Assembly (NCBI RefSeq): GCF_002113885.1
Contig: NW_018408922.1
Coordinates: 1,113,144-1,177,143 of the forward strand
Origin: Mizuhopecten yessoensis
Taxonomy: Eukaryota
Reading direction: 5' to 3'
Length of the DNA: 64,000 bases
Shown here piece after piece: positions 10,760 through 52,486 of this stretch. The stretch's first letter is position 1; each line of letters starts with the position of its first letter. A model generated the notes under the pieces. The model saw only the letters and a list, made by a program, of their open reading frames with translations. It searched no databases and was not told where the DNA came from. Both the position numbers and the translations under genes were made by a program.

Positions 10760-11610
10760 CTGCTAAATGACTCGCATTCTGCTCTACGTAACTTTTAACA
10801 TGAACAGGTGGTTCCTCACCAGCTCCGTGTACAAATAAGCAAGTGCGCTCTGACACATCTCTACTGTATCCGTGTCGTTTCCAGCTCGTTGTTGTCTGTG
10901 TTACACGTTGAGTTTAAAAGCACATTAGTGCATGGCCCATCCTGAACAACGGAAGCGGTCCGAATGGTTTGCAATGAAGTTTTTCTCCACTCTGATACCT
11001 TTGCTTGAATACTATTATACATTATGTAATTCAATTTTTCTCCGTCCATGCATATCTCGATTGTTTCCCCAGCAAGTATCAATTTCCAAATATGTCCGGA
11101 ACAATGGATTGACACCCCACTTGATACAGTTTGGTCAGTTTTCAGGATATTCTGGAAACTTTTAGCCCATGTTAAATGTGTAATGTCATTAACACAATAA
11201 TTCAGTGTAGTGTCATTTCCATGAGATAAGCTTATGGTACCTTTGTCGTTTGCCAATCGAACATAGGTTGTATAGTCCAAATCGGAATCTGACGTGTTTG
11301 TAGTTAACTTCTCAGTTTGTTGCAAGCTAAGTTTTTTCAAAAGCTGATTCCATTCGATCTTGAGATGTGTTGATACAAAGCCGTCTGTTTCATGCTCAAC
11401 TGTATCGAGATCTAAGGAAGCCCGAAATGAGAAAGGAAATAGATTAACTGTTTGTTCACTTTGGAGTTTAATGACAAAAAATAGCAAGTCCACATAATGC
11501 AATCACACATATGGCTACGACACCAACCACACAAGAGCACCATCTACGTCCAATCTTGGTATACGCGTTGTAAAAACACTGACGAACAGCTGAAAGGCAG
11601 GTTCTTGATC
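10760..11610 (-). pseudogene. Paralog A of the TM/beta-domain/alpha-beta-hydrolase family; two frameshifts, hydrolase domain truncated
   Basis: Begins after the acceptor ttcttcag (~11611). TM segment RRWCSCVVGVVAICVIALCGLAIF joins VIKLQSEQ (ORF 10861-11502) if one T is removed from the T6 run near 11476-11481. The ORF matches the beta domain of the paralogs (IEWN..LSLQQT, YC..W..FQNIL, CSGHIW, C.DG.KL.YI.Y, V.EW). Another frame gives RTCLFVHGAGEEPP (C codon 10841-10839), then a GTAAG donor-like site at 10759. No HSMG motif was found downstream. Confidence 0.85.
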
Positions 11611-11744
11611 CTGAAGAAAAAGAACATTCTTGAGAACTATTATCATTACCTTAAACTAAATATTGTCTTTGAAATAATTTAGATTGAGTAAATACACAAT
11701 GCATCTCAAGCACACACGCATGCGTACACACATAGGGAGATATT

Positions 11745-11920
11745 AGCCAGGTGGCATAGTACTAGTGTATAGCGACTGATAAGGCAGCTTCTGCGAATTC
11801 CTCAAAATTGTATTGATTAATGTTGTATATGTGTATTGTATTGATGGTATATATTGTATATCTATGTAATGTAAAGCGCGTTAGTGTGGCTTATTATAGC
11901 TAGATAAATGTTGTATATTA
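11745..11920 (+). repeat. Dispersed repeat copy (L2/CR1-like tail), homologous to 1435-1620
   Basis: Visible similarity to 1435-1620, including TGTAAAGCGC and a TA-rich tail. Confidence 0.55.
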
Positions 11921-49539: not shown

Positions 49540-49785
49540 CACCTATAGACCATTTATAAGTTGACCGGTTGTGGCCATTTCGACTTGTCGTTGTAGCGAC
49601 TTTGCTAGTAGGTCGCTATTACAGCAAAAGGCCTAAGGGCCTACGTCGGTCACCTCTGTAATATTACACTCATCGTGAAGACGTGAAATAGTATAAGTAT
49701 GTAACGAGAGAATACATTGTAATACTGTACATAACTCGCCATGTAAACGGAGTGAAGGGAGACACTAAACTATTCAATTCAATCA
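49540..49785 (+). mobile_element. Probable 5'-truncated SINE fragment in the 5'-UTR intron
   Basis: Ends in GGAGACACTAAAC..TTCAATTCAATC, a short-repeat tail typical of mollusc SINEs. No A or B box remains. Confidence 0.35.
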
Positions 49786-50866
49786 TTTAGGCTTTGAATG
49801 AGAAATAATAGTTTCTTAGTCATAAAGCCAAATTTTACCCGTTAGTCTATCCTTGAGGTAAAACAAGATCTTTATTTTTTGAAACCATCTATTACAATTT
49901 CATTATAATTTTTCCAACCAAAGTTGAATTATTTCCTGCTAAAAATGGACAAAATCGTATTGGCCACGCTTCTCTAGTCCAAAGTATGAGGATAGTTCAT
50001 ATTTCTTCATACCATCTACTGTAATTGTCATTTCTTCATATTTAATCCAGACACATGCTATTTCCCTTTGTTATTTCCCTTTGGTATTTCCCTTTATAAA
50101 CTATAATAAACGACGTACCAGGAGTTTTTTTTCTCTCCATCTCATCCAAAATATTCCAATCCAGTTTGAATTATTTTTAGCTGTAAATGTACAAAATATA
50201 CCAAAGAGTGTTATTTCCCAATGTAAATTAAGTTCAACTTTATCCCCTCCCCAAGGGAGAACAGTTGATAATGGGGTAATGAAATGTACAAGTTATTTGA
50301 AGCACACTATGAACTTTTTATCTATGAAAAGTGTTTGATCCTGTTTAGACTGAGCTTGAGGAAGAATATATTCATAATTTAATTAAGAGTGAGTATCGAA
50401 CCTGGATGCTGATTTCATATCGATTTTCTTTAACATTTGTGCTTTTGAGATAGATAGGAAACTGTATATACCCAGTGACGATAATTAATAGACATCTTGA
50501 CGAACTGACCATGAACATATTTTTGTAAAATACGTGTACAACTAATAAAATAAGAATACAAAAAAATAGATTAAAGATATTTCCGGCATGCAATCCCTAA
50601 TATTGCCATGTATTTGCCTGTGACTGACACAGCAATCGGCAGATCAGAGACAATTGATGACCCTGTTCAAAGTAAAGTAAAAGTTTTGCAGATGTTTTAT
50701 AGACATAATGCGCGCAGACATCCGGACCAGCAAGAATTATTGATATAAGTTGCAATAACCTGTTTCACAATTGTGGTAAAATAAGCAAAGCTTATATAAC
50801 TCTTACTATTCTTCTTCTATATTTCATCTTTTTTATTCATTCTTTCAGAACTCATCACAACTCGGG

Positions 50867-52486
50867 ATGCCGTTGGCCAACGAAACCGAAAGTCTTCTGA
50901 GACCACAACAGACAAAATGGCGATATCGGAAGATGTTTGTCATTGTGATTTTCTTGGTCCTGTTATGTGTCGTTGCCAGTCTTACCTTTGGCTGCATATA
51001 CTGGATAAAAACTTTCAACAACAAAATCAATGTTGTTCATTTAAAAGATAAACTGCCCAGTTCGTTTGGAGTTTCGTTTAACATTCAAGCTGAAAATTCG
51101 TCTCTTCTTACGAGTACAAAGGACGTCACTGTCAGATGGGAAAAAGAGCCAAATCTCATGAGATTTCAACAAAAAAGCGTGGAAACGCCTTGGAACGAAA
51201 GCATCGTCACTACCGTCAGCATACTGGACCATAGAGCCGTAGTTTCGTACACTCTAGAAAACAAGACTAGCTGGATATGCGCTAACGATTTAAAAATCTT
51301 CGACTGGTTTTCAATTTTTCGCCTCATGATGATTTCCACTGAATCTAATCACACAGACGATAACTGTACCGGCCGTATATGGACAGTACCATACGAAGGA
51401 CAGAGGGTATTTATATGTTTAAGAGGAAATCGAATCGCTTACATAAAGTATGATAACAAAGTTGCTGAGCCTCAAGAATGGGTGGTCCCCTCCCGATCTT
51501 CCATCAAACTGCCCAAGGATGCACCCGAGTGTAGAGTAAAATACCCACAGGTGTCTTCATTCAGCATACTAGAACAGGGTAGTGCTAATTCAACTAGAAA
51601 CCAATATGATAATAGAAAAGGTGAAGTACTTTTGGGTCAACCAGAAATATTTGCTAGAAGTACAAAACCAGACTGTCTATTTGTTCACGGAATTGGTGTA
51701 GAGACGCCAAAAAGTGGATTCAGAACTCTCACTAGCTTACACTACTGGGGCCACATCGAAAAATACACCCCACAGTGTATATCGCACAAGTTTATTGAGT
51801 TCAACACAGTCGACAATGGCTGGGACTCTAAAGTTTTACATGAAATGTTCTGCGAGTTTGCCACTGGCTCAAAGTCAGGAGGAATCATTGTCAACAAGCT
51901 AATTATTTCCCACTCCATGGGAAACAACATCATTGCGGCAGCGCTTCACAGCAAAAACTGTATATTGGACAAGGCGTCCAGTCAATGGTTCTCCGTGTCT
52001 GCACCCTGGCGTGGAAGCAAGGTGGTGGACACGCTCGAAACTCTCTGCTCTGGTTACTTAAGATATAAGCCTCTCGGGAAAATGGTGGCATATATATTAA
52101 AGCACACAAAGTTTTGCACAGAGGACGGCAACATGTCTCCGGCCTACGCCACACTGGAGCCCACCTACAAGTCCAAAACAGGTATCACTTACGACGATCT
52201 TGTGTCCATAGCTAAACAGTATGTAAACGGGGCGTTGTGTGGCACATCGCCATGGGGTATCGGCCTGAATCTACCATTCAGCGGGGCTTTGGAGTTCATA
52301 CAAGATTACAGTAAACTCGAGAAGCCAAACGACGGGGTAGTGGCACGAAAAAGCTGTGACATTTTTGGCGGAAAATTTCAAAACTCCTCCCATAACAAAT
52401 TCTTTCTGGCCTCCGTAAATCATGGTGAGAGTTCTACCAAATTTGGCTGTTCTGTGAATCTTTGTTCGTGGTTTAGACACTTGTAA
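50867..52486 (+). CDS. Paralog D: intact single-coding-exon type II membrane alpha/beta-hydrolase (lipase-like), 539 aa
   Basis: Uninterrupted ORF. Cytosolic ETESLL, basic KWRYRK, TM MFVIVIFLVLLCVVASLTFGCIYWI; several N-glycosylation sequons; CLFVHGIG, YWG, ISHSMGN (Ser 51914-51916), APWRGS, GALCG, NDGVV, VNH, CSWF. Confidence 0.93.
   Translation: MPLANETESLLRPQQTKWRYRKMFVIVIFLVLLCVVASLTFGCIYWIKTFNNKINVVHLKDKLPSSFGVSFNIQAENSSLLTSTKDVTVRWEKEPNLMRFQQKSVETPWNESIVTTVSILDHRAVVSYTLENKTSWICANDLKIFDWFSIFRLMMISTESNHTDDNCTGRIWTVPYEGQRVFICLRGNRIAYIKYDNKVAEPQEWVVPSRSSIKLPKDAPECRVKYPQVSSFSILEQGSANSTRNQYDNRKGEVLLGQPEIFARSTKPDCLFVHGIGVETPKSGFRTLTSLHYWGHIEKYTPQCISHKFIEFNTVDNGWDSKVLHEMFCEFATGSKSGGIIVNKLIISHSMGNNIIAAALHSKNCILDKASSQWFSVSAPWRGSKVVDTLETLCSGYLRYKPLGKMVAYILKHTKFCTEDGNMSPAYATLEPTYKSKTGITYDDLVSIAKQYVNGALCGTSPWGIGLNLPFSGALEFIQDYSKLEKPNDGVVARKSCDIFGGKFQNSSHNKFFLASVNHGESSTKFGCSVNLCSWFRHL

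What the first reader, a model, noticed from the sequence alone, without database searches (positions are those of the whole stretch)
10760..52486. Expanded cluster of intronless membrane-anchored lipase-like genes resembling a protist/oomycete family
Seen: four paralogs share the order tail, TM, ~200-aa beta domain, basic linker, hydrolase. Hydrolase motifs are C-L-F-[IV]-H-G-x-G, YWG, TPxC, WD, [TS]HSMGN, PW[KR]GS, GxxCG, NDGxVxxxSC, NH and a terminal CxW[FY]. The three full-length CDSs are each one 1.6-1.7-kb exon, in a window whose other genes are spliced. Established: the motif order HG / xHSxG / PxxGS / NDGxV / NH is that of bacterial family I lipases, and replacement of the first Gly of GxSxG occurs in Bacillus lipases and CALB. 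Recollection, unverified: the same string (CIFIHG.G, YWG, THSMG, PM.GS, MCG, NDGMV.F.SC, LNH, KWF) defines an expanded hypothetical family in Phytophthora and other protists. Inference: an uncharacterised lipid-hydrolase system in a mollusc, acquired by horizontal transfer or retained patchily, then expanded by birth-and-death evolution.
Basis: partly seen in the sequence, partly recalled or inferred. Interest (0 to 1): 0.9.

Follow-up and report, generated by a model that had tools for sequence, protein, structure and literature searches.

The report
Scallop lipases with built-in lipid carrier
This scallop carries a cluster of undescribed membrane-anchored enzymes that join a predicted fat-splitting domain to a predicted fat-carrying domain; the family is otherwise found in single-celled eukaryotes and small viruses, and bivalves may have acquired it long ago by gene transfer.

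Summary
Four paralogs are real, in a scallop (probably Mizuhopecten). Two are intact (15357-17066, 50867-52486). One has a stop codon that segregates in the species (39001-38999; both alleles seen in RNA-type runs). One is a frameshifted, truncated pseudogene. Each intact protein has a cytosolic tail, one membrane anchor, a LolA/ependymin-fold domain (model pLDDT 92; Z 8-11) and an alpha/beta-hydrolase like family I.1 lipases, PlaB and LPLA2 (Z about 14). Ser, Asp and His are conserved in 145, 146 and 146 of 146 relatives. No Pfam model or paper covers the family. It occurs in oomycetes, heteroloboseans, amoebozoans, a euglenid and 26-kb Polinton-like viruses. It was not found in bacteria. The only named animals are bivalves (scallops, unionid mussels). 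Animal copies form one clade (100/98) with single-exon coding sequences, mostly behind a 5' UTR intron acceptor, and the orthologs tested show purifying selection. Best reading: an endolysosomal lipase with its own lipid-carrier domain, acquired once from a protist early in bivalve history. The donor is unresolved, oomycetes are not the sister group, and inheritance with massive loss is not excluded. Activity is untested. The scan has no other note of it (index covers this genome only).

The parts
10760..11610 (-). Paralog A, pseudogene: TM, LolA-like domain and first hydrolase motif only; frameshift near 11475, TAG at 10863-10861 with a second frameshift; AG acceptor 11612-11611, possible GT donor 10759-10758
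   Evidence: best match 42% to P0011; no further hydrolase remnant in the window
15357..17066 (+). Paralog B, intact single-exon CDS, 569 aa (an upstream ATG at 15330 gives 578 aa); TM about 15501-15557, LolA-like domain about 15582-16118, hydrolase 16230-17063; no dileucine motif in the tail
16452..16970 (+). B catalytic motifs: THSMGN 16452-16469, NDG from 16878, NH 16965-16970
37709..39343 (-). Paralog C, single-exon CDS of 544 codons, interrupted in this haplotype; orthologs intact in Pecten (541 aa) and Ylistrum (552 aa); dileucine motif 39331-39314
38999..39001 (-). Segregating premature stop at codon 115 of C; a sense allele is present in other individuals
   Evidence: table 3, place 39000
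39384..39385 (-). Splice acceptor of the 5' UTR intron of C; RNA-type contigs end or join here
   Evidence: X19 contig to 39383; X15 contig with 174 extra bases
37459..37708 (-). 3' UTR of C, inferred from the extent of the RNA-type contigs; no RNA coverage at 37000-37410
   Evidence: tables 2 and 8
50847..50848 (+). Predicted acceptor of a 5' UTR intron of D, 18 nt before the ATG; conserved in Pecten and Ylistrum
50867..52486 (+). Paralog D, intact single-exon CDS, 539 aa; divergent from C, an arrangement kept in Pecten and Ylistrum
50882..50899 (+). D acidic dileucine motif (ExxxLL) in the cytosolic tail
50933..50989 (+). D transmembrane anchor, type II by flanking charge
51038..51550 (+). 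D LolA/ependymin-fold domain (aa 58-228), four conserved Cys
51674..52483 (+). D alpha/beta-hydrolase domain: oxyanion HG 274-275, Ser350, Asp489, His519

Best explanation
These genes encode type II membrane-anchored serine lipid hydrolases of an undescribed eukaryotic family. Shown: domain order, both folds (as models), conserved Ser-Asp-His and oxyanion HG, purifying selection on C and D, and transcription of C. Inferred mechanism: the tail's acidic dileucine sends C- and D-type proteins to endosomes/lysosomes. The glycosylated, disulphide-rich lumenal part has a LolA/ependymin-fold half-barrel that takes up a lipid from membranes or food-derived particles. It hands the lipid to the lidded family-I-type hydrolase, which cuts an acyl ester (glyceride, phospholipid or sterol/carotenoid ester). 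The A/B-type subgroup lacks the dileucine, and some members have a KxKR site in the linker, so these may work at the surface or be shed. Inferred origin: one two-domain gene entered an early bivalve (or older) ancestor from a protist, before scallops and unionid mussels split. It gained a 5' non-coding exon and then expanded and decayed by birth-and-death evolution. My odds by step: active serine hydrolase 0.9; lipid substrate 0.75; lipid hand-over by the N-domain 0.5; transfer 0.55-0.6.
For: Hydrolase model matches Proteus lipase (Z 14.3), PlaB (14.0), LPLA2 (13.5) and LCAT (13.3). Foldseek's top hit is P. aeruginosa lipase. A 146-sequence profile retrieves family I.1 lipases as its top four PDB hits, weakly (E 0.25-0.55), with NDG aligned to NDG. 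Triad conserved 145/146/146 of 146. N-domain model pLDDT 92 matches VioE, LolA, sponge EPD-BCP1 and mouse EPDR at Z 8-10.7, and LolA and Ependymin clusters at TM 0.62-0.63. Bivalve versus protist N-domain hhalign 94.9%, E 4.5e-8. Dileucine motif in 12 of 23 animal tails against 0.53 expected. dN/dS 0.13-0.25. Animal clade 100/98 inside protist diversity. Only bivalves are named among animals. Single-exon CDS in scallops and Sinanodonta. Viral copies show that the family moves.
Against: No activity, substrate or localisation data. About 20 protist members are little more than a signal peptide plus hydrolase, so the N-domain is dispensable, and LolA folds also serve non-carrier roles (VioE is the top Z). 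No donor is resolved: AU tests do not reject grouping with viruses (p 0.42), oomycetes (0.22) or Rhizamoeba (0.06). The best-supported sister clade (97/87) lacks the N-domain. Seven animal-clade sequences come from hosts I could not name. Only 150 of 669 representatives were seen, ranked by a scallop-built profile.
Confidence: 0.55

Rival explanations
1. Same enzyme, but inherited vertically from an early eukaryote. It was lost in fungi, choanoflagellates and most animals, kept in bivalves (or more lophotrochozoans), and lost its coding introns by retroposition.
For: The family spans several eukaryote supergroups, including Amoebozoa. Animals plus Rhizamoeba is not rejected (p-AU 0.06). The related EPDR family was lost many times in protists and animals (PMC6280359). 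Two animal-clade genes come from an unidentified bilaterian (L004, L005; spliced neuropeptide-type GPCR exons on L005).
Against: No named hit from any non-bivalve animal, fungus or unicellular holozoan in any look-up, although the HMMER scan read all 1.84 billion representatives. The two named amoebozoans do not group together or with the animals. This needs very many independent losses.
Confidence: 0.33
2. The N-domain is a pro-domain or intramolecular chaperone, not a lipid shuttle. It folds or inhibits the lipase and is cut off at the basic linker, as with the foldase need of family I.1/I.2 lipases or the EPDR+cathepsin fusions.
For: A KxKR site lies just before the hydrolase in five of the six short-tailed homologs of the A/B subgroup. 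The linker is long and of low confidence. An EPDR domain fused in front of a lysosomal hydrolase has precedent (PMC6363788).
Against: Many protist members lack the domain and keep all catalytic motifs. The window's C and D linkers have no such site. The domain is under purifying selection in C and D (dN/dS 0.16-0.29).
Confidence: 0.25
3. A Polinton-like virus carried the gene from a protist into the bivalve germ line.
For: Family members sit next to fibre, A32 ATPase and double-jelly-roll capsid genes on two syntenic 26-kb contigs. The first, simpler tree put them in a 97% clade with the animals. Animals plus viruses is not rejected (p-AU 0.42). Polinton-like viruses repeatedly capture lipases (PMC4642659).
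Against: The known viral copies have a shortened N-region with no significant match to the full domain that bivalves share with protists (versus 118). Mixture-model trees place them with Rhizamoeba (94/86). No viral genes flank the scallop copies in the window.
Confidence: 0.08
4. The enzymes are acyltransferases or thioesterases (LCAT/LPLA2- or PPT-like chemistry), or hydrolyse a non-lipid ester, rather than being plain lipases.
For: 22 of 146 members match Pfam LCAT weakly; a few match DUF676, PGAP1 and Palm_thioest. LPLA2 and LCAT are within about 1 Z of the top hit.
Against: The Pfam matches cover only the nucleophile elbow. Sequence-profile hits in the PDB are family I.1 lipases.
Confidence: 0.2

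Closest known systems
Bacterial family I.1/I.2 lipases (P. aeruginosa LipA 1ex9, Proteus mirabilis lipase 4gw3, Burkholderia lipases)
   Same: Fold (Z 12.7-14.3), motif order HG / xHSxG / GS / NDG / H, helical lid region
   Different: Only about 15% identity; eukaryotic; xHSMGN instead of GHSxG; many conserved Cys; fused LolA-fold domain and membrane anchor; no bacterial member found
Legionella PlaB phospholipase A (6zti)
   Same: Z 14.0 over 206 residues; Thr replaces the first Gly of the elbow (THSTG; bioRxiv 10.1101/2020.09.01.246603)
   Different: PlaB has its own C-terminal beta-sandwich and NAD(H)-controlled tetramer; no LolA domain, no anchor; 14% identity
Lysosomal phospholipase A2 / LCAT (4x95, 6mvd; Pfam PF02450)
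   Same: Animal secretory-pathway lipid hydrolases; Z 13.3-13.5; D just passes the Pfam LCAT cut-off (22.6 versus 21 bits)
   Different: Match limited to the elbow; the new family has a separate N-terminal carrier-fold domain and a type II anchor
EPDR+cathepsin fusions and EPDR1 (PMC6363788)
   Same: A LolA/EPDR-fold domain in front of an endolysosomal-type hydrolase; patchy eukaryote distribution
   Different: The partner here is a lipase fold, not a protease; that paper has no mention of a lipase fusion; no Pfam Ependymin match
Lipases of Polinton-like viruses and virophages (PMC4642659)
   Same: Family members occur on 26-kb viruses beside capsid and packaging genes
   Different: The published ones named are Lipase_3- or PLA2-type; whether this family is among them was not tested; the scallop genes are host genes

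Membership tests
alpha/beta-hydrolase superfamily | Central parallel sheet with strand-turn-helix nucleophile elbow | tested here: met
   E344-349 then H351-361 around Ser350; Z 12-14 to many members
alpha/beta-hydrolase superfamily | Nucleophile-acid-His in that order and conserved | tested here: met
   Ser 145/146, Asp 146/146, His 146/146
alpha/beta-hydrolase superfamily | Triad residues converge in space | not testable with these tools
   model coordinates not returned; only NDG-to-NDG alignment with Proteus lipase
Bacterial lipase family I.1/I.2 | Clear sequence similarity to the type proteins | tested here: not met
   about 15% structural identity; profile E 0.25-0.55; no NCBIfam hit
Bacterial lipase family I.1/I.2 | GHSxG pentapeptide | tested here: not met
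   first position T63, S40, A27, V12, G3 of 146
Bacterial lipase family I.1/I.2 | Bacterial host; foldase or calcium dependence | tested here: not met
   no relative found in 185,579 prokaryote genomes with two narrow pattern sets; foldase and calcium need not tested
Bacterial lipase family I.1/I.2 | Long-chain triglyceride hydrolysis | not testable with these tools
   needs an assay
LCAT/LPLA2 (PF02450) | Full-length Pfam match including cap and membrane-binding domains | tested here: not met
   only profile positions 124-182 of 392 match
LolA/EPDR fold superfamily | Antiparallel half-barrel sheet with helical lid | tested here: met
   pLDDT 92; most top rows of the wide search are LolA, LolB, EPDR, LprG, RseB or VioE, Z up to 10.7 over about 150 residues
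LolA/EPDR fold superfamily | Hydrophobic cavity that binds lipid | not testable with these tools
   no coordinates or binding assay
Ependymin-related proteins (PF00811) | Pfam Ependymin match and EPDR cysteine profile | tested here: not met
   no match in 20 N-domains; four conserved Cys are present but were not mapped to the EPDR profiles
Endolysosomal type II membrane proteins | Acidic dileucine in the cytosolic tail | tested here: met
   12 of 23 animal tails versus 0.53 expected; absent from the A/B subgroup; localisation itself untested
Horizontally acquired animal genes | Host-genome integration (not contamination) | tested here: met
   C-D synteny in three scallop genera; held by runs of 10 studies; spliced transcript
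Horizontally acquired animal genes | Absent from other animals and nested within a donor lineage | tested here: inconclusive
   only bivalves named, but some hosts unnamed and donor unresolved

The most novel reading that the evidence does not exclude
An unrecognised class of eukaryotic lipase with its own lipid-extraction domain (LolA/EPDR fold fused to a family-I-type hydrolase) circulates among protists and Polinton-like viruses. It was transferred once into the bivalve ancestor, where it became a lysosomal lipid-digestion system that other animals lack and that still gains and loses copies within species.
Probability: 0.35. Interest if true: 0.78.

Novelty: new variant of a known kind. Interest (0 to 1): 0.62.

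Why it matters
Animal lysosomes normally pair a lipase with a separate activator or carrier (saposins, GM2A, NPC2, perhaps EPDR1; established knowledge). A natural fusion of a LolA/EPDR-fold domain to a lipase gives a direct test of the open idea that this fold delivers lipids to hydrolases. The family has about 500 representatives at E below 1e-10, no Pfam model and no paper that I could find. If the transfer holds, it is an old, retained and expanded eukaryote-to-animal transfer in filter feeders that digest algal lipids inside cells. The segregating stop in paralog C is a natural knockout in a farmed species, testable against existing lipid or carotenoid phenotypes.

Tried and rejected
Contamination: rejected by synteny in three scallop genera and presence in many runs. 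C as a sequencing error or fixed pseudogene: rejected, both alleles occur in different samples. Oomycetes as nearest kin: not supported by any tree, though the AU test does not reject it. Bacterial or IMG/VR homologs: none with two pattern sets; the patterns are narrow. The single-sequence and scallop-only PDB searches gave nothing. P0067 fell inside the animal clade on a long branch, but it is 60% GC and lacks the animal insertion, so I left it out as a probable protist. I guessed that sample BUSC20-1 was a sponge metagenome; this could not be confirmed, and its contig carries a spliced bilaterian-type GPCR. No repeats were shared with the scallop that could name the unnamed hosts. Paper searches for the gene ids, the fusion and scallop lipase transfer found nothing relevant. 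The 84-row careful tree did not finish; the 44-row one did. The three N positions in the window were not filled or looked up, and the read-laying stretch stopped short of them.
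Full report
What is in the window. Translated searches find four related genes. B (15357-17066, plus, 569 aa; an upstream ATG at 15330) and D (50867-52486, plus, 539 aa) are open single-exon reading frames. 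C (39343-37709, minus) is colinear with them over 544 codons but has a TAA at codon 115. A (11610-10760, minus) has a transmembrane stretch, a frameshift near 11475, the N-terminal domain, a TAG at 10863-10861 with a second frameshift and the first hydrolase motif, and then the similarity ends.

Organism and reality. The closest hits are uncharacterised proteins of four scallop genera. Two that sit on a contig of the same length as the window's own are labelled Mizuhopecten yessoensis, so the window is probably that species and the cluster continues outside it. The divergent C-D pair is kept, intact, in Pecten and Ylistrum. dN/dS is 0.13-0.25 overall and 0.12-0.18 in the hydrolase (Nei-Gojobori, dS near 1, so approximate). 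Contamination is excluded.

Paralog C in the population. Four runs from four studies were laid on 37000-41100. An RNA run (X19) and a DNA run (X10) carry a sense codon at the stop. A probable RNA run (X15) and a DNA run (X6) carry the stop. It is therefore a segregating null allele. RNA-type contigs cover 37459-39385 and are absent from the flanks at 37000-37410 and 40014-40287. The X15 contig has 174 further 5' bases that join at the AG at 39385-39384, which indicates a 5' UTR intron. Acceptor-like sites sit just before the start codon in D, in the C and D orthologs, in the Sinanodonta gene and in L004; none is evident for B. The Sinanodonta CDS is also one exon. The usual design is an upstream exon plus a single coding exon.

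The hydrolase domain. The AlphaFold model of D matches bacterial family I lipases best by Foldseek. VIA-align gives Proteus lipase Z 14.3 (230 aligned, rmsd 3.9), PlaB 14.0, B. licheniformis BlEst2 14.0, LPLA2 13.5 and LCAT 13.3; these are effectively tied. A profile of 146 family members retrieves four family I.1 lipases as its top PDB hits, weakly (E 0.25-0.55), aligning NDG with NDG. Ser350, Asp489 and His519 are conserved in 145, 146 and 146 of 146 sequences, and the oxyanion His274 in all 142 that cover it. An active serine hydrolase is very likely. It works like a family I lipase but fails membership on identity, pentapeptide and host.

The N-terminal domain. Folded alone with a 66-sequence alignment it reaches pLDDT 92. 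The wide structural search is dominated by one superfamily: VioE Z 10.7, several LolA at 8.3-9.6, the sponge carotenoprotein EPD-BCP1 9.1 and mouse EPDR 8.2, then LprG, LolB and RseB. The Atlas gives LolA and Ependymin clusters at TM 0.62-0.63. There is no Pfam match. The domain is not a bivalve addition. An iterative profile links it to the N-terminal regions of most long protist members, and bivalve and protist profiles align end to end (94.9%, E 4.5e-8). The closest described design is the EPDR+cathepsin fusion; that paper does not mention a lipase fusion (PMC6363788).

Targeting. One hydrophobic segment, mostly with basic residues before it, plus 3-9 sequons and 13-17 cysteines after it indicate a type II protein with a lumenal body. 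An acidic dileucine occurs in 12 of 23 animal tails against 0.53 expected from shuffles. The sequences are related, so this overstates independence, but the motif spans C, D, unionid and unnamed lineages. The A/B subgroup lacks it, and five of its six short-tailed members have a KxKR site before the hydrolase.

Distribution. A full HMMER scan found 669 representatives, 497 of them at E below 1e-10. Named members are scallops; the unionids Sinanodonta and Potamilus; the oomycetes Thraustotheca, Achlya and Saprolegnia; the heteroloboseans Acrasis, Willaertia and Percolomonas; the amoebozoans Rhizamoeba and Luapelamoeba; and the euglenid Jenningsia. The Atlas adds oomycete-dominated clusters. No other animal, fungus or unicellular holozoan was named. 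None was found in prokaryote genomes or IMG/VR with narrow patterns. Two members lie on syntenic 26-kb contigs with a fibre gene, an A32 ATPase and a capsid-like protein, as in Polinton-like viruses or virophages. Their N-region is shortened and does not match the full domain. Lipase capture by such viruses is known (PMC4642659).

Tree. Under LG+C20 the 12 animal sequences form one clade (100/98). Its sister (97/87) is a small group with the euglenid protein, whose members lack the N-domain. Viruses group with Rhizamoeba, and oomycetes lie far away. All animal copies share a four-residue insertion, and some heterolobosean-like members have one of similar length. AU tests under LG+G4 do not reject animals with viruses, with oomycetes or with Rhizamoeba. 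One origin in animals is therefore well supported and the donor is not. Limits: rows came from the top 150 of a scallop-built profile, the tree is unrooted, long-branched P0067 and P0128 were left out, and seven animal-clade sequences have unnamed hosts. Two of those come from a sample whose contig has spliced bilaterian-type GPCR exons.

Mechanism and verdict. Most likely these are endolysosomal, membrane-anchored lipid ester hydrolases whose LolA/EPDR-fold domain collects lipid and presents it to the active site. They were probably acquired once from a protist before scallops and unionids split, and have turned over by duplication and loss since. Folds, conservation, selection, expression of C and distribution are shown. 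Substrate, hand-over, localisation and transfer are inferred. The main rivals are inheritance with massive loss (0.33) and a pro-domain role for the N-domain (0.25). Both folds are known; their fusion, the family and its spread are not described in Pfam, NCBIfam or the papers searched. Novelty: new variant of a known kind. Interest 0.62.

Noticed in passing
window 39556-39953: Very high-copy short repeat with sharp ends (summed contig depth about 30,000 against 15 in DNA runs), probably a MITE, inside the 5' UTR intron of paralog C; another high-copy repeat starts near 40960
   Followed up: no
window 27230-28170 (minus): Spliced C1q-domain gene with a coiled-coil exon, lying between paralogs B and C
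   Followed up: partly
window 55925-59160 (minus): DEDDh exonuclease with PML_C domain and a Mutator-like transposase fragment, in line with the scan's note of a Kolobok-like element
   Followed up: partly
window 1-1258, 2336-4151, 22460-26132, 33906-36483: Tandem arrays with periods of 32, 227, 59 and 156 bases; a 700-base tandem duplication at 13299-15222 just upstream of B
   Followed up: no
window 32345-32867: Two 72%-identical copies of about 175 bases, 352 apart; Rfam finds no hammerhead at its gathering score, so the noted fossil retrozyme is unconfirmed
   Followed up: partly
L007 1-12812 and L009 1-12970: Two syntenic 26-kb virus contigs (lipase, fibre, A32 ATPase, 730-aa capsid-like protein without a Pfam match, penton-sized protein); possibly an unnamed Polinton-like or virophage group; several more similar lipases exist (P0110, P0173, P0175, P0176, P0178)
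   Followed up: partly
P0026 (Thraustotheca, 1215 aa): Tandem double copy of the hydrolase in one predicted protein; some oomycete-like members have altered elbow motifs (for example P0125)
   Followed up: no
L002 15516-21659: A cytochrome P450 gene lies downstream of the C ortholog in Ylistrum
   Followed up: no
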